Virus record (IMG/VR): IMGVR_UViG_3300022839_000006
Coordinates: 62,001-126,000 of that record
Reading direction: 5' to 3' (one strand)
DNA length: 64,000 bases
Both the position numbers and the translations under genes were made by a program. Positions 1 through 6,063 of this stretch are shown in pieces. Below the pieces are notes generated by a model, which did no database searches, had not been told where the DNA came from, and saw only the letters and a program-made list of their open reading frames with translations. Within the stretch, counting starts at the first letter, position 1. Each line of letters opens with the position of its first letter.

Positions 1-336
1 GATGATAGCTATGAAAGAGCGATTGCTGCACGGATGGAAGCAGAGGTAGAAGTTCAAAGGATTGGCCAGAATGCAGAGCGCGAAAAGGTGCAGGCGCAAA
101 TTAAAGTGATTCAAGCAGAGGCAGATGCAGCATCCCGTGTGGCACAAGCGACCGCAGAAGCACAGGCAATCACTCTTCTTGGCAATGCTGAGGCAGAGGC
201 GATCAAAGCAAGGGGCAACGCACTTCGCGATAACCCAAATCTTGTCAGTCTTGTTCAAGCAGAGCGCTGGGACGGCAAGCTACCAACGACAATGTTGCCC
301 GATATTACAGTACCATTCATGAACATGAGTAACTGA
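1..336 (+). CDS. SPFH/band-7 (prohibitin-like) protein, C-terminal part (5'-truncated by window edge)
   Basis: Ala/Glu coiled-coil (AEAEAIKARGNAL) ending NPNLVSLVQAERWDGKLP, the typical SPFH C-terminus; frame is open back to position 1. Confidence 0.85.
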   Translation, partial: DDSYERAIAARMEAEVEVQRIGQNAEREKVQAQIKVIQAEADAASRVAQATAEAQAITLLGNAEAEAIKARGNALRDNPNLVSLVQAERWDGKLPTTMLPDITVPFMNMSN

Positions 337-682
337 TCTTGAACCTTGGCATTGCAATGATTGTCGCGTATATTCCACTCTTCTATTGGATGATACACGA
401 GGCTGTTAGGCAGAAAAAAGATTTGAAAAAGATTCGACGACAACCTCGTGTTGAGGTGATCACCTCGACATATTATTCCTGACGGAGATGCTAATTTGTG
501 CTGTACAAACAACACAAAGAATATTACGATGCAATCTGATCGGCACGTTCTCTTATCTGGAAGATTTCACAACTGAAACATCTTGTGAAATCTTCCAGAC
601 TGGCATCGACGATGTCGTTGTATTTGATTCTGTTGGACAGACTGCTTTTCGAACAAAAAAGACCACACAATAGAGGTGCAAA

Positions 683-1291
683 ATGAACTACAAATTTCCT
701 GAAATTAAAACGCTATCTGATGTTCTCCCTCACGTTGAGGGGAGGTCAGAGTTTGTTGTGGCTGAACGTGTGTTTGGCACTGTAGTCAATTATATGGTTG
801 CAAAGAAAGACACGTTCGATATGAGTGGTCCTGATGATGTGGGTGGTGCGATTCGTCGTGAATGTCGTGGCATCAAATTTGACTTGGATGGAAACATCAT
901 AGCAAGACCCTTCCATAAGTTTTTCAACGTCGGCGAAAGAGAGGAGACACATCCTAACGTGCTGGACTTTTCCGTTGACCACACTGTCTATACAAAGGAA
1001 GACGGTAGCATGGCACATCCCATCATGTTCAACGGCACTGTACGGTGGTGCACCAAGATGGGACTGACAGACGTGTCTGCTTATATGGACACGTTCTGCG
1101 CGAAGAACCCCAAATACAATCAGTTTGCACGTGATTGCATTGCAGATGGCTACACGCCACTTTTTGAGTATGTGGGACCATTTAACAAAGTGGTAATTGA
1201 GCACAAAGAAGAGAATATGGTGTTGCTTGCTGTACGAAATACCATTACAGGCGAATTTGTCAACATAAACAAGGAGAATGCTAAATGGTGA
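683..1291 (+). CDS. rnlA: RNA ligase 1 (T4 Rnl1/RnlA family), N-terminal half
   Basis: RECRGI, RPFHKFFNVGE, motif I KEDGSM, motif III FEYVGP, LLAVRN..TGE; GAGG SD upstream; stops before motifs IV/V. Confidence 0.9.
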   Translation: MNYKFPEIKTLSDVLPHVEGRSEFVVAERVFGTVVNYMVAKKDTFDMSGPDDVGGAIRRECRGIKFDLDGNIIARPFHKFFNVGEREETHPNVLDFSVDHTVYTKEDGSMAHPIMFNGTVRWCTKMGLTDVSAYMDTFCAKNPKYNQFARDCIADGYTPLFEYVGPFNKVVIEHKEENMVLLAVRNTITGEFVNINKENAKW

Positions 1292-1593
1292 ATGTTGGAG
1301 CACAAGGTGAACTGCGGGGATTACACTCTATGGATATATTCGTCTCAAACATTCCTTGCACAACTTCCCGAGAGTGTGTACCAGCACCTACCAATTCGCA
1401 CATAAACCATAGAAGTTGATATACAGTGCGACGAGTCGTTAAAGAAAATCGTGTGAAGACTTATTTTGAACAAATTGCCAACAATCGTAAAAGAGCGTGT
1501 TCTTTGGTCTCGCAACTGTGGACAACACGTCCACAATCAGTTATCGTTACCCATCGGACAATAGGTTTATAGACAAATCCTACTCAACGTTCA

Positions 1594-1638
1594 ACATCAG
1601 ATATCAGTCGTCAACTCAACTCAACTGATATCTGATGT
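1594..1638. repeat. Perfect 15-bp inverted repeat (hairpin) in the rnlA intervening sequence
   Basis: acatcagatatcagt (1594-1608) / actgatatctgatgt (1624-1638); loop region has tcaac x3. Confidence 0.9.
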
Positions 1639-1671
1639 AAGTTAATAGAATTATACATTTAAGAGGGACTC

Positions 1672-2229
1672 ATGGACATCATAGAAAAAATCAAAACGTA
1701 CGACATTCCTGTTGTAGTGTCACATGGTAGGTATACTTCTGCAGAAGCATTGCTCGAATTTACTCGTCCTCTTGAGGGCATCGAGGGGTTTGTCGTTGAC
1801 TTTGACGGCCACAAGGTGAAGGTCAAGGCTGATCAGTATGTCACGCTTCATAGGGTGAAGGACCAGATTCGAACCGAACGTCACATTCTTGAGATCATCA
1901 TTAATGGAAAACTCGACGATGTTCTCCCTATCCTAGACGCAACAGATCGAGTAACCGTTGAAGAATACCAACAGCGTTTTAACGTGGGGTTCGACGCAGT
2001 TGTGAGTCGAATTGAAGGGCTAGTGTTGCTTGCGCGTGCCCTCCACAGTGGCGACAAGAAGGAAGTTGCCATAAAATTTGTGCCAAATCTCCTACACAAA
2101 GAAGATTCAAGTTTCATATTTCGTGTACTTGATGGTAAAGAATTGCGCCCACATATCATCGAGTACGTTCGCAAAAGCGTAGGTAATACTACACGCTACG
2201 ACGCTCTTCTCAAATGGCTACAAATGTAG
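1672..2229 (+). CDS. rnlA: RNA ligase 1, C-terminal half (motifs IV, V and helical C-domain)
   Basis: EGIEGFVV (motif IV), KVKVKADQYVTLH (motif V); own SD-like aagaggga just upstream of ATG. Confidence 0.88.
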   Translation: MDIIEKIKTYDIPVVVSHGRYTSAEALLEFTRPLEGIEGFVVDFDGHKVKVKADQYVTLHRVKDQIRTERHILEIIINGKLDDVLPILDATDRVTVEEYQQRFNVGFDAVVSRIEGLVLLARALHSGDKKEVAIKFVPNLLHKEDSSFIFRVLDGKELRPHIIEYVRKSVGNTTRYDALLKWLQM

Positions 2230-2301
2230 TAGGTTGTACTGACTTGTTAAAGGAAGAGGACAACGTGCAATTACGCATGCTGATTACAAAAGGACTAAAA
2301 C

Positions 2302-3246
2302 ATGACTTTCGTTAAATTTACATCTATTGACAAGTTCGCTGATGCGTGGAAAATGATGCAACGACAAGAAATTGGCCAGATCCAATACCGCTCCAAAATA
2401 AAGCTGCACGGTACAAACGCCGGAGTTCGCATTGAAGGTGGTCAGCCTTTTTATCAAAAGCGTACTACAGACGTTACACCACTTGCAGACAATGCAGGGT
2501 TCGCATCGTTCGCATGTACTGTAGACTGGAAGATTGACGAAGATATTATCATCTACGGCGAGTGGGCCGGAAAAGGCGTTCAAAAATCTGATGCTGTTTC
2601 TTCGATTCCTACAAAGATGTTGTTTGTTTTCGCAGTGAAAAAAGATGAATACATGATCACTGAACCAGCCGCAATTCGTGAGTATGTACCATACCACCCA
2701 CAGATTGTGATTCTACCATGGTTCGACGAACCAACAACACTAGACATCAACGACGTCAGCAGTGCAAAAGCACTTTCAGAACGTCTCAACGTAGACGTGG
2801 AACAGATTGGATCAGAAGACCCATTCATCAAAGAGCGTTTTGGTATCTCAGGTGTTGGTGAAGGTCTTGTCGTCTCGCCATGTTCAGAAACTGGTTCGGT
2901 CCCACTTTGGCTTTACAACACATATACATTCAAGGTCAAATCTGATGCTCACCTTGTACAGAAAACTAAAGGAATCAACTCTTCAATCTACATTGAAATT
3001 CCTGGTTCTGTCAGAGAATTCTGTGATCAATTCGTCACGGACAACCGATGTGAACAGATGGTTCAAGAACACCTTGAAGGCTCCTATACTATGAGAGGAA
3101 TGGGGACATTTCTTAAAACAATCAACGCTGATATTCTGAAAGAAAGCAGAAACGAATTTGCTGAACTTGGTGTAGAATGGAAGATGGTTGCAAAGGAAAT
3201 CAATAAACGTACTGCGAAATGGTTCAAATCTAAAAATACAGTTTGA
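2302..3246 (+). CDS. RNA ligase 2 (Rnl2-like)
   Basis: KLHGTN (motif I), IYGEWAG (III), GEGLVV (IV), FKVK (V). Confidence 0.88.
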   Translation: MTFVKFTSIDKFADAWKMMQRQEIGQIQYRSKIKLHGTNAGVRIEGGQPFYQKRTTDVTPLADNAGFASFACTVDWKIDEDIIIYGEWAGKGVQKSDAVSSIPTKMLFVFAVKKDEYMITEPAAIREYVPYHPQIVILPWFDEPTTLDINDVSSAKALSERLNVDVEQIGSEDPFIKERFGISGVGEGLVVSPCSETGSVPLWLYNTYTFKVKSDAHLVQKTKGINSSIYIEIPGSVREFCDQFVTDNRCEQMVQEHLEGSYTMRGMGTFLKTINADILKESRNEFAELGVEWKMVAKEINKRTAKWFKSKNTV

Positions 3247-3276
3247 CAAATAACGACACAGTGTCAGGAGACAGCC

Positions 3277-3624
3277 GTGAACATTTTCAACTGGATCAAA
3301 TCACTCTTCCAAAACCCTGTAGTGGCTCAACCAATTGATGGGCATGTGGTCTTTGATGGAAGACGTATTGCATGTCTTCCATCAAAGACAGCAGCGGAAG
3401 AATTCATTCGAAATCAATTCCAAGAGGTCGATGTCAAAACGGCCCGTATAAATCTAACTGCCAGAGGCAAATGTCGATCCACTCAGGATGGAAGATGGAA
3501 GGCGTTTAGAAGCAATCTGAAATTGTCAAACAGGAGACGTCAAGATGAAAAAAGAGTTCAAACCAGTAGTGGGTGGACGAGCCAGCATCTGCACATGGGA
3601 AATAGAATTTTATTTCCTAGATAA
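3277..3624 (+). CDS. hypothetical protein
   Basis: GTG start after AGGAG; 3' end overlaps the next ORF, so the end is uncertain. Confidence 0.5.
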   Translation: MNIFNWIKSLFQNPVVAQPIDGHVVFDGRRIACLPSKTAAEEFIRNQFQEVDVKTARINLTARGKCRSTQDGRWKAFRSNLKLSNRRRQDEKRVQTSSGWTSQHLHMGNRILFPR

Positions 3625-3802
3625 ACAGCAAGCGAGATCATTCATCAAACTTCTAATCAAAGACGAAATTGATTTTTCGTTTGAATATGAAAAAGTTCTT
3701 GATCAAGCTGACGAACGGCACTATGTTACAGTAACTGGCTGCTGGGCGGCAAACATGGTTCGGGTTGCTCAGATGGCAGAAGAAGTTGACTATGTTGGAT
3801 AA
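3545..3802 (+). CDS. hypothetical protein
   Basis: 85-aa ORF in a run of co-oriented small genes. Confidence 0.65.
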   Translation: MKKEFKPVVGGRASICTWEIEFYFLDKQQARSFIKLLIKDEIDFSFEYEKVLDQADERHYVTVTGCWAANMVRVAQMAEEVDYVG

Positions 3803-3820
3803 CCAAAAAGGAATATAAAC

Positions 3821-3988
3821 ATGAACAAGGATGCAAAACAGCTGGCCAGAGATATTTATCTACAGGCTCTTAGTAACGCGGCGGGCTTGGCCGATCTTAC
3901 CCAGGAGGTAAGAATACAAATGCTTCAAGAGGCTGCTCAAATATGTATTGATGCTGCTGATGTATTTTACGAAGCAATTGGTGAGTAA
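3821..3988 (+). CDS. small hypothetical protein (55 aa, not in ORF track)
   Basis: Read by eye: MNKDAKQLARDIYLQ...FYEAIGE*; AAGGA SD upstream. Confidence 0.6.
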   Translation: MNKDAKQLARDIYLQALSNAAGLADLTQEVRIQMLQEAAQICIDAADVFYEAIGE

Positions 3989-4141
3989 GAATCATCAAAA
4001 AAATCTGGTGCAATTGGCCAATAAATTATGGCACATACAATCTGAAAGCATGGCACGAAATTGCCAGAGGTGTCGTGTTTCTTCCTCTGGTAATTATAGC
4101 ATTCGCCCTGCTCTACTTTTCAGTGTGTTTGATGACAGGCA

Positions 4142-4480
4142 GTGCTGAAGCTGAACGAATTAGAAAAGATGTGCAGTGACATGATCAAAACAACAAATGG
4201 ACTAAAACGAAATCACGTAGTTGAAGATGTTAATAGTACATCTGGTTTCTGGCCTGCTAGAATCTGGCGAATATTGGACAGCGAGCATGTGATCACAATT
4301 TGCACAGGCCTTCATGTAAAAAAGATGCACGTCTCTGAATTGAGAAAGTCAGAGTATACCGGTAGGTGGATGAGCAATCGCAGCATCCGCGAAAAGACAC
4401 ACTTTCTGGGGATGACTAGACTGAGAGGATTAATTAAAGGCGCTCGGCATTATAATCCCGAACTGATCCCAGAAGAATGA
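4142..4480 (+). CDS. hypothetical protein
   Basis: 112-aa ORF, start uncertain. Confidence 0.5.
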   Translation: MLKLNELEKMCSDMIKTTNGLKRNHVVEDVNSTSGFWPARIWRILDSEHVITICTGLHVKKMHVSELRKSEYTGRWMSNRSIREKTHFLGMTRLRGLIKGARHYNPELIPEE

Positions 4481-4498
4481 AACTGGAGTAACAATGAC

Positions 4499-4702
4499 AT
4501 GAACAGTAGAGTTTATGAAGATCAGGATGGTTTGGAAATTACCACTAAAGATCGATCAATAGAATTTCTGAAATTTGACGGAGGAAAAACGATTCTTGAT
4601 GTGGTGATTCATGACAAGAAACTGCAAAATCCCGTAGTGGTGTGTCTAACATCAGATGAAGCAACCCAATTGAAAAACTGGCTGAATGATCAGGGATTCT
4701 AA
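4499..4702 (+). CDS. hypothetical protein
   Basis: GGAG SD, 67 aa. Confidence 0.65.
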   Translation: MNSRVYEDQDGLEITTKDRSIEFLKFDGGKTILDVVIHDKKLQNPVVVCLTSDEATQLKNWLNDQGF

Positions 4703-4989
4703 ATTTGATAGACAGTTGACACCGAAGTCATTCTGTTATATTTTTATATTATAGAGGAAACACACATGGGGCGACGTGGAATTAGTCAACTGTACAGTCC
4801 CTTGTGATACTGTCCCAAAGTGGGCAACGTACAGGACCTCAAGACAGCAAAGAGCCAAGCATAGCGTGCAAAATACAAGAAATCAAGTCTAGAGATCATG
4901 ACTGCTCTTGTGGCGCATCGCAGCATAAGTCCCTTCCAGTCCCAACCAATCACTAAAATTTTAACACTCATGAAATAGGAGATGTACTA

Positions 4990-5181
4990 ATGTACAATAG
5001 AAGTTTTGATCTAGGATTCGTCGCTGGAATAGTAGGTGCTGTTGTAGTGTGTATGGTTATTATTGTCGTCTTCACTACCCCGACTTCAGAGTGGCAGTCA
5101 AATGCCATCGAACGTGGTTATGCACTGTATTGTCCATCGACTGGTGACTTTGCGTGGAAAGATGAATGTGACGTAAAATGA
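4990..5181 (+). CDS. small membrane-anchored hypothetical protein
   Basis: AGGAG SD; N-terminal hydrophobic helix; overlaps next gene by 4 nt. Confidence 0.7.
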   Translation: MYNRSFDLGFVAGIVGAVVVCMVIIVVFTTPTSEWQSNAIERGYALYCPSTGDFAWKDECDVK

Positions 5182-5537
5182 CTTGGAAATTGTTCCTTGA
5201 TGATATCAGGTTCCCTGCTGATGTCAGATATGATTATGGTCCCTACCGAGATATTGTAATCTGTCGTAGTATGGACGATGCAGTGTGGTGTGTTGAACAA
5301 TATGGTCTCCCTCAATTCATCAGCTTTGACCATGATTTGGCAGACGTTCATTATGAACAGGGCGATGGAGAAAAAACAGGGTTTACATTTGCCAAGTGGC
5401 TATGTGACTATGTCATGGACAACAATCTTCAAATGCCCGAAGATTTTGGTTTTTTTGTACATTCCATGAATCCCGTCGGCGCAGAAAACATCCGTTGTTA
5501 TATGAACAACTTTTTAAAGTACTGGCAACACAAATGA
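5178..5537 (+). CDS. cyclic-phosphate-processing receiver-domain protein
   Basis: LFLDDIR.P, ISFDHDL, KTG..FAKWL and VHSMNPVG motifs. Confidence 0.8.
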   Translation: MTWKLFLDDIRFPADVRYDYGPYRDIVICRSMDDAVWCVEQYGLPQFISFDHDLADVHYEQGDGEKTGFTFAKWLCDYVMDNNLQMPEDFGFFVHSMNPVGAENIRCYMNNFLKYWQHK

Positions 5538-5893
5538 TGAAAATGTATATTGCCTTATTGGATGAATTTCCTGATCATATGACACCCACTCTTGTGGCTC
5601 ATTCGGTGTTGTCTGCACATGATAAATTCTCAGAGAGGCTTATGATTAACGGTCACTCTGGATATTATTATCCTGAATACATAGACTGGTTTGAGAATTC
5701 ATTCAAGAAAGTCACATTACGAGTGAACCAAAAAGAGTTTGACAAGATTGCTGCATTGCCAAATGTTCATTTGGGACACGAGAACACCACACTGGAAGGC
5801 AGAAAGGCCTGTGCCGTAGTTTGTCCCATGCCAAATGAAAACTTGCCCAACGTATTGAAGTATGCTAAACTGTGGAAACCCAAGCACGAATAA
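5534..5893 (+). CDS. peptidyl-tRNA hydrolase II (PTH2)-like protein
   Basis: MKMYIA..D, VAHSVL, WFENSFKKVTLRV pattern; start at 5534 overlaps the previous stop. Confidence 0.65.
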   Translation: MMKMYIALLDEFPDHMTPTLVAHSVLSAHDKFSERLMINGHSGYYYPEYIDWFENSFKKVTLRVNQKEFDKIAALPNVHLGHENTTLEGRKACAVVCPMPNENLPNVLKYAKLWKPKHE

Positions 5894-6063
5894 AGAACAC
5901 TTGTTGAGCAATCTTCAATTCCAGAGTGACTGTTTAGAGAACCCTTTATTGGAAGTAGACTTTAGGCACACTCCATAGACAATCAATAATTACAAACAAG
6001 AGTGTGACATGACACGAGAAAGTATCAAGCGAGTGATTAAATTAATCGAAAACGGAGTAAATA

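What the first reader, a model, noticed from the sequence alone, without database searches (positions are those of the whole stretch)
683..2229. RNA ligase 1 split through its catalytic domain into two intact genes, with no intein
Seen: ORF 683-1291 carries motifs I (KEDG) and III, while ORF 1672-2229 carries motifs IV (EGFVV) and V (KVK). Together they total 387 aa, about one full Rnl1. They are in different frames, 380 nt apart, neither has internal lesions, the second has its own SD, and no intein motifs are present. Established: the nucleotidyltransferase active site needs residues from all these motifs, and Aeh1 nrdA is a precedent for an endonuclease-split enzyme that reassembles non-covalently. 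Inference: a heterodimeric RNA ligase with a composite active site. Alternatives are RNA splicing, ribosomal bypassing, or a recently inactivated gene backed up by the adjacent Rnl2.
Basis: partly seen in the sequence, partly recalled or inferred. Interest (0 to 1): 0.72.

Follow-up and report, generated by a model that had tools for sequence, protein, structure and literature searches.

The report
Two-piece phage RNA ligase 1
A T4-like phage from a salt lake encodes its tRNA-repair enzyme RNA ligase 1 as two separate genes cut inside the catalytic domain. Many related phages share this arrangement and keep both pieces under selection, so it is almost certainly a working two-subunit enzyme, not a broken gene or an intron.

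Summary
ORF 683-1291 (202 aa) carries Rnl1 motifs I and III. ORF 1672-2229 (185 aa) carries motifs IV and V plus the C-terminal domain. They are in different frames, 380 nt apart, with no room for an intein.

The interpretation, a two-subunit ligase with a composite active site, is well supported in silico:
- At least 66 clusters of stand-alone C-halves of the same length exist in public data.
- In relatives the halves are separated by -14 to about 2,200 nt. Some abut or overlap (TGA-ATG, TAATG), which rules out an intron as the general explanation.
- All catalytic residues are invariant in both halves.
- dN/dS is 0.10-0.18 against 92%-identical relatives.
- A complex prediction scores 0.90, against 0.00 for the best control.
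- An independent metagenome carries the same structure.

The 380-nt spacer is a deletion remnant of a ~2.2-kb accessory-gene cassette that is still intact in close relatives. In other lineages the same junction holds antisense GIY-YIG or HNH homing endonuclease genes. The split state changed at least five times on the Rnl1 tree.

This is a new member of the known "genes-in-pieces" class (Aeh1 nrdA, phage 25/44RR gp43, T4 gp39/60). No biochemical test was possible.

The parts
683..1291 (+). Rnl1 N-half gene (202 aa). It carries the N-terminal part of the nucleotidyltransferase domain, with the RECRG element, K79/F81, motif I K105xDG108, K125 and motif III E162.
   Evidence: Pfam RNA_lig_T4_1 positions 1-158 of 227, E 1.8e-22. 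It aligns to T4 Rnl1 residues 53-193 of PDB 2c5u. Invariant residues are listed in alignment A4.
995..1006 (+). Motif I (KEDG), holding the predicted adenylylated lysine K105.
   Evidence: K105, D107 and G108 are invariant in 23 split N-halves.
1271..1291 (+). Last six codons and stop of the N-half (KENAKW*). They are derived from the Shine-Dalgarno and start region of a lost downstream gene.
   Evidence: Alignment with L009. L009 ends the N-half at ...NINN*, followed by 70 nt that look like a promoter, then AAGGAG and the ATG of a 121-aa ORF. The window lacks those 70 nt and reads through the former SD.
1292..1671 (+). 380-nt non-coding spacer. It is a collinear deletion remnant of a ~2.2-kb cassette that lies between the halves in 92%-identical relatives.
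   Evidence: blastn and tblastx against L175 and L009. Window 1267-1316 matches L175 25-74, 1344-1432 matches 1406-1494, 1436-1476 matches 1542-1582, and 1482-1669 matches 1987-2173. There is no intact ORF and no Rfam family at E<=1 apart from chance miRNA-like hairpins.
1285..1316 (+). Remnant of the first ~11 codons of the 121-aa ORF of L009/L175 (MxNxGAQGELR).
1344..1432 (+). Remnant of the 3' end of a DUF6745-family gene (..LPESxYQHxPIRT*) and the sequence downstream of it.
   Evidence: 88% identity to L175 1406-1494. L175 481-1467 matches Pfam DUF6745, E 3e-19.
1426..1572 (+). Frameshifted remnant of a small 'MTYFEQ..' ORF that is present in three tandem paralogous copies in L175.
   Evidence: The start of the ORF is in one frame (1426-) and the rest in another (1466-1564).
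1595..1637 (+). Perfect 14-bp hairpin (arms 1595-1608 and 1624-1637, loop 15 nt) upstream of the C-half. Its function is unknown, and it has no T-run after it.
   Evidence: X2 has a 5-nt deletion in the loop with the stems kept. The hairpin is less perfect in L173-L175.
1661..1668 (+). Shine-Dalgarno-like AAGAGGGA for the C-half, 3 nt upstream of its ATG.
   Evidence: ATTTAAGAGGGAC is identical in L173, L174 and L175. SD-like GGAG/AGGA lies before the C-half ATG in most split relatives.
1672..2229 (+). Rnl1 C-half gene (185 aa). It carries the last strands of the nucleotidyltransferase domain, with motif IV E38-G39 and motif V K50/K52, plus the helical C-terminal domain.
   Evidence: It aligns to T4 Rnl1 residues 216-304. 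There are 66 clusters of stand-alone homologues of 143-303 aa, most 184-189 aa. Invariant residues are listed in A3.
2302..3246 (+). Neighbouring Rnl2-like ligase gene (314 aa). It is context only, not part of the split.
   Evidence: Pfam RNA_ligase PF09414, E 1.8e-5, just under the cut-off. Homologues near the split Rnl1 in L089 and L090 carry PF09414.

Best explanation
The window holds a genes-in-pieces RNA ligase 1. The phage is a T4-like myovirus of 208 kb from a salt lake.

Shown:
- The cut falls in a variable linker that corresponds to about residues 194-205 of T4 Rnl1. This lies inside the nucleotidyltransferase domain, between motifs III and IV.
- The N-half carries the ATP-binding lysine (motif I) and motif III.
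- The C-half carries motifs IV and V and the C-terminal domain, which in T4 is the tRNA-specificity domain.
- The C-half has its own ATG and a Shine-Dalgarno-like site.
- The 380-nt spacer has no intact gene. It is what remains, after several internal deletions, of a ~2.2-kb accessory-gene cassette still present between the halves in 92%-identical relatives. One deletion fused the N-half to the former ribosome-binding site of the first cassette gene, which gave the N-half its odd KENAKW tail.

Inferred:
- Each half is translated separately, and the two chains assemble non-covalently to rebuild one active site.
- With the phage's polynucleotide kinase homologue, the enzyme repairs tRNAs cut by host anticodon nucleases, as T4 Rnl1 does.
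- The split arose when a free-standing homing endonuclease gene inserted at this linker and supplied a stop and a start. GIY-YIG and HNH genes occupy exactly this junction, antisense, in other lineages.
- Once the gene was split, the gap became a neutral landing pad where endonuclease genes and other accessory genes come and go.
For: 1. Collinearity. ORF1 residues 1-193 and ORF2 residues ~8-185 align without loss to intact Rnl1 genes, and the two alignments meet within 2-10 codons.

2. The split is widespread and stable.
- 66 clusters of stand-alone C-halves were found, 46-70% identical to ORF2. Most are 184-189 aa. The 34 that were aligned all start at the same Met.
- The window lies in a clade of 7 sequences, all split, with 100% SH-aLRT support.
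- Spacers in split loci are -14, -4, -1, 0, 1, 51, 293, 380 and 632-1145 nt, and about 2,200 nt in the 92%-identical relatives.

3. Where the halves abut, the frame offset varies (0, +1, +2), and GGAG lies 6-8 nt before the ATG, inside the N-half tail. This fits translational coupling and argues against splicing or recoding.

4. Residues matching those known to be essential in T4 Rnl1 are invariant: R62, K79, F81, K105, G108, K125 and E162 in 23 N-halves, and E38, G39, K50 and K52 in 34 C-halves. The correspondence to T4 residues rests and on my knowledge of the T4 mutational work.

5. dN/dS (NG86) is 0.10 for the N-half (window against L009) and 0.17-0.18 for the C-half (window against L173-L175). 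Deeper pairs within the split clade give <=0.1.

6. In an independent metagenome (X2), ORF1 is unchanged and ORF2 has one change (D11N). The 380-nt spacer has 3 substitutions and a 5-nt deletion.

7. Complex prediction gave ipSAE 0.90 in three runs, against 0.00 for the best of three controls. That mark was reached by 58 of 80 solved complexes and 2 of 110 mismatched pairs. The interface includes N-half 98-107 and 162 and C-half 36-52, which is the composite active site.

8. The genome has no other Rnl1 copy. It has a polynucleotide kinase homologue and a T4-type major capsid gene.

9. The origin of the spacer is shown by the collinear matches to L175 and L009.

10. Homing endonuclease genes lie at the same junction in L011, L092, L109, L111, L112, L114, L117, L125, L169, L178, L182, L196, L197, L203, L210 and L213.
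Against: - There is no biochemical or expression evidence. No RNA run could be listed, so separate translation and assembly are inferred.
- The complex score may reflect the model's memory of the single-chain T4 Rnl1 fold, and I supplied my own alignments.
- No endonuclease remnant was found in the window's own spacer, so an endonuclease origin for this clade's split is inferred from other lineages.
- No sigma-70-type promoter or terminator of note was found in the spacer, so how the C-half is transcribed is unknown.
- dS is saturated for the deeper pairs, which makes those ratios only qualitative.
Confidence: 0.8

Rival explanations
1. The 380-nt spacer is a self-splicing (group I or II) intron, and the mRNA is spliced to give a single-chain Rnl1.
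For: - Phage genes of T4-like viruses do carry group I introns (PMC2988022).
- Removing 1289-1671 (383 nt) would restore the frame.
- The spacer has some secondary structure.
Against: - No group I or II model matched at E<=1 in the window, or at gathering score in 14 split loci.
- The fold z-score is only -1.35.
- The spacer consists of recognisable fragments of protein-coding genes from a larger cassette.
- Clade members have spacers of -14 to 1 nt and are still split by a stop and a new ATG.
- The C-half has a conserved ATG and SD, which an exon would not need.
Confidence: 0.03
2. The gene is a recently inactivated pseudogene. The phage relies on the neighbouring Rnl2-like ligase.
For: - An Rnl2-like gene lies 70 nt downstream.
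- The spacer itself is decaying DNA.
Against: - Both halves are intact.
- dN/dS is 0.10-0.18.
- Catalytic residues are invariant across a deep split clade.
- An independent population shows 0 and 1 changes in the halves, against 4 in the spacer.
- The split state persists across lineages whose halves are only 50-70% identical.
Confidence: 0.06
3. Both halves are functional but no longer form a ligase. For example, one keeps only the tail-fibre-attachment role known for T4 gp63, or each has a new separate role.
For: - T4 Rnl1 has a second, genetically separable function in tail fibre attachment (established knowledge; also mentioned in PMC3322345).
- Selection on each half does not by itself prove that they act together.
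Against: - Nucleotidyl-transfer residues are invariant in both halves. That would not be expected if ligation were lost.
- The halves are always adjacent and often translationally coupled.
- A confident predicted interface rebuilds the active site.
Confidence: 0.08
4. Ribosomal bypassing, stop-codon read-through or frameshifting joins the two ORFs during translation.
For: - T4 gene 60 has a 50-nt hop.
- In L089 the halves are separated only by an in-frame TGA.
Against: - 380 nt is far beyond any known hop.
- The frame relation between the halves differs among relatives (0, +1, +2), so no single recoding signal could be conserved.
- Every C-half has its own ATG with an SD.
Confidence: 0.02
5. 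An assembly or sequencing error created an artificial split.
For: The window comes from a metagenome assembly.
Against: The same structure is present in an independently assembled contig from another sample and study, in a second IMG/VR contig (L008), and, with other spacers, in dozens of contigs.
Confidence: 0.01

Closest known systems
Aeromonas phage Aeh1 split nrdA (nrdA-a / mobE / nrdA-b), 'genes-in-pieces' (Friedrich et al. 2007, cited in PMC2988022)
   Same: An enzyme gene of a T4-like phage is cut inside a catalytic region into two cistrons that are collinear with intact homologues. A free-standing homing endonuclease gene sits at the junction (here in related lineages). The halves are expected to reassemble non-covalently.
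   Different: - The enzyme is Rnl1, a covalent nucleotidyltransferase.
- The window itself has no endonuclease gene, only a decayed spacer.
- The endonuclease genes at this junction are all antisense.
- The split is conserved in a large clade and recurs in several lineages.
- Activity is not demonstrated here.
Split DNA polymerase gp43 (43A/43B) of Aeromonas phages 25 and 44RR (Petrov et al., cited in PMC2988022)
   Same: Related phages carry either a seg-type endonuclease gene or only an untranslated intercistronic sequence (IC-UTS) between the two halves. This is the pattern seen here: 380 nt of non-coding spacer in the window and endonuclease genes in relatives. [quoted passage not shown]
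   Different: - The enzyme is different.
- The window's spacer can be traced to decayed accessory genes.
- Compact forms with overlapping stop and start exist.
T4 topoisomerase genes 39 and 60 separated by mobA (PMC2988022)
   Same: An endonuclease-associated split of a subunit gene that is single in related phages.
   Different: - T4 gene 60 additionally uses a 50-nt translational bypass. Nothing comparable is seen here.
- The enzyme is different.
T4 RNA ligase 1 (gp63; PDB 2c5u, 5tt6)
   Same: Same family: Pfam RNA_lig_T4_1 plus T4_Rnl1_C. All motif residues are present, and there is a polynucleotide kinase partner in the genome.
   Different: T4 Rnl1 is a single 374-aa chain. Here the chain is cut at about residue 194-205, within the nucleotidyltransferase domain.

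Membership tests
Rnl1-type RNA ligase (T4 gp63 family) | Nucleotidyltransferase motif I KxDG with the catalytic lysine | tested here: met
   K105-E-D-G108 in ORF1. These residues are invariant in 23 N-halves and align to T4 Rnl1.
Rnl1-type RNA ligase (T4 gp63 family) | Motifs III, IV (EG) and V (KxK) | tested here: met
   E162 in ORF1, and E38-G39 and K50/K52 in ORF2. All are invariant and align to T4 IEGYV...KIKSD.
Rnl1-type RNA ligase (T4 gp63 family) | Rnl1-specific helical C-terminal domain | tested here: inconclusive
   Pfam T4_Rnl1_C scores only 16.7 bits against a cut-off of 27. The profile of the family aligns to T4 residues 216-304, which reach into the C-domain. Several homologues carry a precomputed PF20819 hit.
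Rnl1-type RNA ligase (T4 gp63 family) | Single polypeptide | tested here: not met
   There are two ORFs in different frames. This is the point of the finding.
Rnl1-type RNA ligase (T4 gp63 family) | ATP-dependent adenylylation and RNA end-joining activity | not testable with these tools
   This needs biochemistry.
Genes-in-pieces created by a free-standing homing endonuclease | The two cistrons are collinear with a single gene in related phages, with nothing lost | tested here: met
Genes-in-pieces created by a free-standing homing endonuclease | A homing endonuclease gene at the junction | tested here: inconclusive
   Not present in the window: the spacer holds remnants of other genes. It is present at the same junction in many relatives, as GIY-YIG and HNH genes that are all antisense, including L092 within the window's clade.
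Genes-in-pieces created by a free-standing homing endonuclease | Separate translation signals for the downstream half | tested here: met
   An ATG with an SD-like site is found in the window and its relatives.
Genes-in-pieces created by a free-standing homing endonuclease | The halves assemble into an active enzyme | tested here: inconclusive
   The predicted complex scores 0.90 against 0.00 for the best control. Selection acts on both halves. There is no experiment.
Group I / group II intron | Conserved ribozyme core detectable by covariance models | tested here: not met
   Searches gave no match. Relatives have spacers of 0 to 1 nt.
Split intein (protein trans-splicing) | An N-intein (~100 aa) at the end of the first chain and a C-intein (~35 aa) at the start of the second | tested here: not met
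   The N-half ends 3-12 residues after the conserved TGEY. The C-half starts ~10 residues before the conserved IPVV. No extra sequence is present.

The most novel reading that the evidence does not exclude
The linker between motifs III and IV of Rnl1 is a recurrent target where mobile endonuclease cassettes split the gene without killing it. The cassettes are always antisense, and they bring a stop for the upstream half and a ribosome-binding site and start for the downstream half. The resulting two-subunit ligase is then kept for long periods, even after the endonuclease gene is lost. That would be the first natural two-chain covalent nucleotidyltransferase. It would also make Rnl1 a model for how homing endonucleases create, swap and abandon gene splits. 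Subunit separation may itself be useful, for example for regulation or for escaping host factors aimed at Rnl1.
Probability: 0.35. Interest if true: 0.7.

Novelty: new member of a known kind. Interest (0 to 1): 0.6.

Why it matters
- Ligases and capping enzymes of the covalent nucleotidyltransferase superfamily are textbook single-chain catalysts. A natural version whose active site is built from two polypeptides would show where the fold tolerates a break. It would also give a ready-made split-ligase scaffold for biotechnology.
- For phage biology it adds a fourth enzyme, and by far the most widely sampled one, to the short list of endonuclease-associated genes-in-pieces.
- It comes with an unusually complete series of stages: an endonuclease gene present, other accessory genes in its place, a decayed spacer, and tightly coupled halves.
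- The repeated use of one site by two unrelated nuclease superfamilies, always antisense, poses a concrete, testable question about how free-standing homing endonucleases choose and reshape their insertion sites.

Tried and rejected
- **Rfam scans.** An E-value-mode scan of window 1-6000 and a gathering-mode scan of 14 split loci gave no intron or other RNA family. The only hits were chance miRNA/snoRNA-like ones.
- **RNA fold of 1270-1690.** The z-score is -1.35, which is unremarkable.
- **Nucleotide search of cultured phages.** There was no near match. By protein, the best cultured relatives are only 30-45% identical, and those inspected (RpAliso, B23) are intact. I found no isolate with a split Rnl1 of this clade. 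The 1,698 records with an N-half match were not all examined.
- **Promoter and terminator scan.** It found nothing above shuffles in the spacer.
- **Repeat search.** The spacer is not repeated elsewhere in its own genome, so it is not a repeated mobile element.
- **RNA sequencing runs.** None was listed, so no direct test of splicing or expression was possible.
- **Pfam on the L009/L175 121-aa ORF and the L088 77-aa ORF.** No family matched.
- **Literature searches for a described split Rnl1.** Nothing was found in the searchable library. Subscription journals are not covered.
- **Single origin of all split forms.** Rejected by the AU test.
Full report
**Observation**

The window is bases 62,001-126,000 of a 208,230-bp IMG/VR virus record that CheckV rates as complete. 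The record encodes a T4-type major capsid protein (Pfam Gp23, E 9e-148). DNA runs that hold it are labelled salt lake metagenome.

- ORF 683-1291 (202 aa) matches Pfam RNA_lig_T4_1 over profile positions 1-158 of 227 (E 1.8e-22).
- ORF 1672-2229 (185 aa) matches the T4 Rnl1 C-terminal domain weakly.
- The ORFs are in different frames and 380 nt apart. AAGAGGGA lies 3 nt before the second ATG.
- Profiles of the two halves align to T4 Rnl1 (PDB 2c5u) residues 53-193 and 216-304.
- The cut therefore lies at about T4 residue 194-205, inside the nucleotidyltransferase domain, between motifs III and IV.

The structure is not an assembly error. A contig from a different sample and study covers 400-2600 in one piece, with 11 substitutions and a 5-nt deletion.

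**Collinearity with intact genes**

In Ruegeria phage RpAliso, Synechococcus phage B23 and most metagenomic relatives, one ORF covers both halves. The end of the ORF1 match and the start of the ORF2 match are 2-30 codons apart. Nothing is missing and nothing is added, so there is no room for intein blocks. The junction region in intact genes is a variable linker that often already contains a Met.

**The split is a family trait**

A search of 5.8 billion proteins with ORF2 returned 66 clusters of stand-alone proteins, 46-70% identical to ORF2, many on contigs of 100-275 kb. Most are 184-189 aa. The 34 that were aligned all begin at the same methionine.

Among the loci I fetched, split arrangements have these spacers:

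| Spacer (nt) | Loci | Content |
|---|---|---|
| -14 | L205 | overlap |
| -4 | L184 | overlap |
| -1 | L090 | TAATG overlap |
| 0 | L089 | TGA directly followed by ATG |
| 1 | L100, L181 | none |
| 51 | L186 | not examined |
| 293 | L088, L094 | a 77-aa ORF |
| 380 | the window | decayed gene fragments |
| 632-1145 | many | endonuclease genes |

In the compact forms the frame offset between the halves is 0, +1 or +2. The last codons of the N-half contain GGAG 6-8 nt before the C-half ATG. These are the usual signs of translational coupling, and they are incompatible with a conserved splicing or recoding signal. Rfam found no intron in the window or in 14 split loci.

**What the 380-nt spacer is**

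Two sets of contigs from 92%-identical relatives overlap each other. L009 holds the N-half plus 610 nt downstream. L175 holds 2,175 nt upstream of the C-half. L009's tail matches L175 1-568 at 94%.

Together they show a cassette of about 2.2 kb between the halves:
- a promoter-like 70 nt;
- a 121-aa ORF;
- a 328-aa DUF6745 gene (E 3e-19);
- three tandem small paralogous ORFs.

The window's spacer is a collinear series of pieces of this cassette:

| Window | L175 |
|---|---|
| 1267-1316 | 25-74 |
| 1344-1432 | 1406-1494 |
| 1436-1476 | 1542-1582 |
| 1482-1669 | 1987-2173 |

The retained pieces include the first ~11 codons of the 121-aa ORF, the last ~17 codons of the DUF6745 gene and a frameshifted small ORF. 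Deletion from the longer form is therefore the parsimonious direction.

One deletion removed the 70 nt after the N-half's original stop region. The N-half now reads through the former Shine-Dalgarno site of the 121-aa ORF, which explains its unusual tail KENAKW. The last ~190 nt before the C-half, including ATTTAAGAGGGAC, are shared with the relatives.

**Selection**

Positions corresponding to residues reported as essential in T4 Rnl1 are invariant. The residue correspondence comes, and the essentiality from my knowledge of the T4 mutational analysis.
- In 23 split N-halves: R62, K79, F81, K105, G108, K125 and E162.
- In 34 C-halves: E38, G39, K50 and K52.

Pairwise dN/dS (NG86) is 0.10 for the N-half (window against L009) and 0.17-0.18 for the C-half (window against L173-L175). 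Deeper pairs within the split clade give <=0.1, with saturated dS.

In the independent population X2, ORF1 has no change and ORF2 has one (D11N, at a variable position). The spacer has three substitutions and an indel. The genome has no second Rnl1. It does have a polynucleotide kinase homologue, the expected partner for tRNA repair.

**Assembly of the halves**

A complex prediction with my alignments of the two halves scored ipSAE 0.90 in each of three runs. The best of three controls scored 0.00. The pass mark was reached by 58 of 80 solved complexes and 2 of 110 mismatched pairs. The tool warns that these counts hold only roughly with user alignments and that a pass may reflect memory of a known fold.

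The confident interface includes N-half residues 98-107 and 162 and C-half residues 36-52. Motifs I and III therefore face motifs IV and V. This supports a composite active site but does not prove it.

**Homing endonucleases and recurrence**

In L011, L092, L109, L111, L112, L114, L117, L125, L169, L178, L182, L196, L197, L203, L210 and L213, the gap holds one ORF of 215-333 aa.
- The ORF is always on the strand opposite to Rnl1, and it usually overlaps the N-half's stop.
- The ORFs fall into two unrelated groups, GIY-YIG (Pfam GIY-YIG, SegE_GIY-YIG, LEM-3_GIY-YIG) and HNH (HNH, NUMOD3, HTH).
- L204 also carries an antisense GIY-YIG gene, but its split lies about 20 residues further downstream.
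- Closely related Rnl1 genes can carry different classes. L011 has GIY-YIG, while L109 and L111 have HNH. This implies replacement at an existing split.

On a maximum-likelihood tree of 100 concatenated or intact Rnl1 sequences, the split state needs at least five changes. The window sits in an all-split clade with L088, L094, L089, L090, L092 and L100 (100% SH-aLRT). Forcing all split forms into one clade is rejected (delta lnL 478, p-AU 1.7e-82).

Whether these are independent splits or lateral spread of a junction cassette by homing cannot be told from these data.

**Comparison with what is known**

The review of mobile DNA in T4-related phages (PMC2988022) describes three endonuclease-associated splits:
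- nrdA of Aeh1 (mobE), shown to retain activity;
- gene 43 of phages 25 and 44RR, which carry a seg gene or only an untranslated intercistronic sequence, and whose halves co-purify and are active;
- T4 genes 39 and 60 (mobA).

The present case works like these and closely parallels the gp43 pair. Searches of the paper library found no description of a split Rnl1. I therefore class it as a new member of a known kind.

It has three notable extras: a very large and old split clade, a full series of spacer states, and exclusive antisense orientation of the endonuclease genes.

**Limits**

No transcript, protein or activity data exist. No RNA run could be listed. How the C-half is transcribed across a 380-nt spacer with a 14-bp hairpin (1595-1637) is unknown. 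The endonuclease origin of the window clade's split is an inference.

Noticed in passing
L011 4584-5249, L109 2062-2856, L112 2187-2870, L117 2298-2948, L125 2310-2957, L169 2097-2936, L092 1854-2855 and others: Every homing endonuclease gene found between Rnl1 halves lies on the strand opposite to Rnl1. There are 17 loci, from two unrelated nuclease superfamilies. Most overlap the last codons of the N-half in antisense. I have no explanation for the uniform orientation.
   Followed up: partly
L175 43-2173 (and L009 4595-5198): The cassette between the halves in 92%-identical relatives holds a 121-aa ORF with no Pfam family, a DUF6745 gene, and three tandem paralogous small ORFs that start MT(A)YFEQ. 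One of these gives a weak sub-threshold hit to MbnB/TglH/ChrH.
   Followed up: partly
window 1595-1637: A perfect 14-bp inverted repeat with a 15-nt loop lies just upstream of the C-half, with no T-run after it. An independent population has a 5-nt deletion confined to the loop. The hairpin is less perfect in L173-L175. It might be an RNA processing or stability element.
   Followed up: partly
L204 1726-2453: Here Rnl1 is split about 20 residues further downstream: the C-half starts ~17 residues before motif IV. The gap again holds an antisense GIY-YIG gene. This is a second split site in the same domain.
   Followed up: no
L115 1429-2502; L222 2501-2615: L115 has an in-frame TAG inside the N-terminal part of an otherwise collinear Rnl1. 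L222 has overlapping, poorly matching halves. These may be pseudogenes or sequencing errors.
   Followed up: no
window 1-336 and L088, L089, L090 upstream regions: A Band_7/SPFH (prohibitin-like) gene lies a few small ORFs upstream of the split Rnl1 in the window and in distant members of the clade. The position of the Rnl2-like gene varies: downstream in the window and L089, upstream in L090.
   Followed up: no
L011 5353-5372, L196, L203, L213 (20 nt before the C-half ATG): In several endonuclease-bearing loci a perfect TATAAT lies about 10 nt upstream of the C-half ATG, in place of a Shine-Dalgarno site. This hints at a promoter in the endonuclease/C-half intergenic region and a very short leader.
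   Followed up: no
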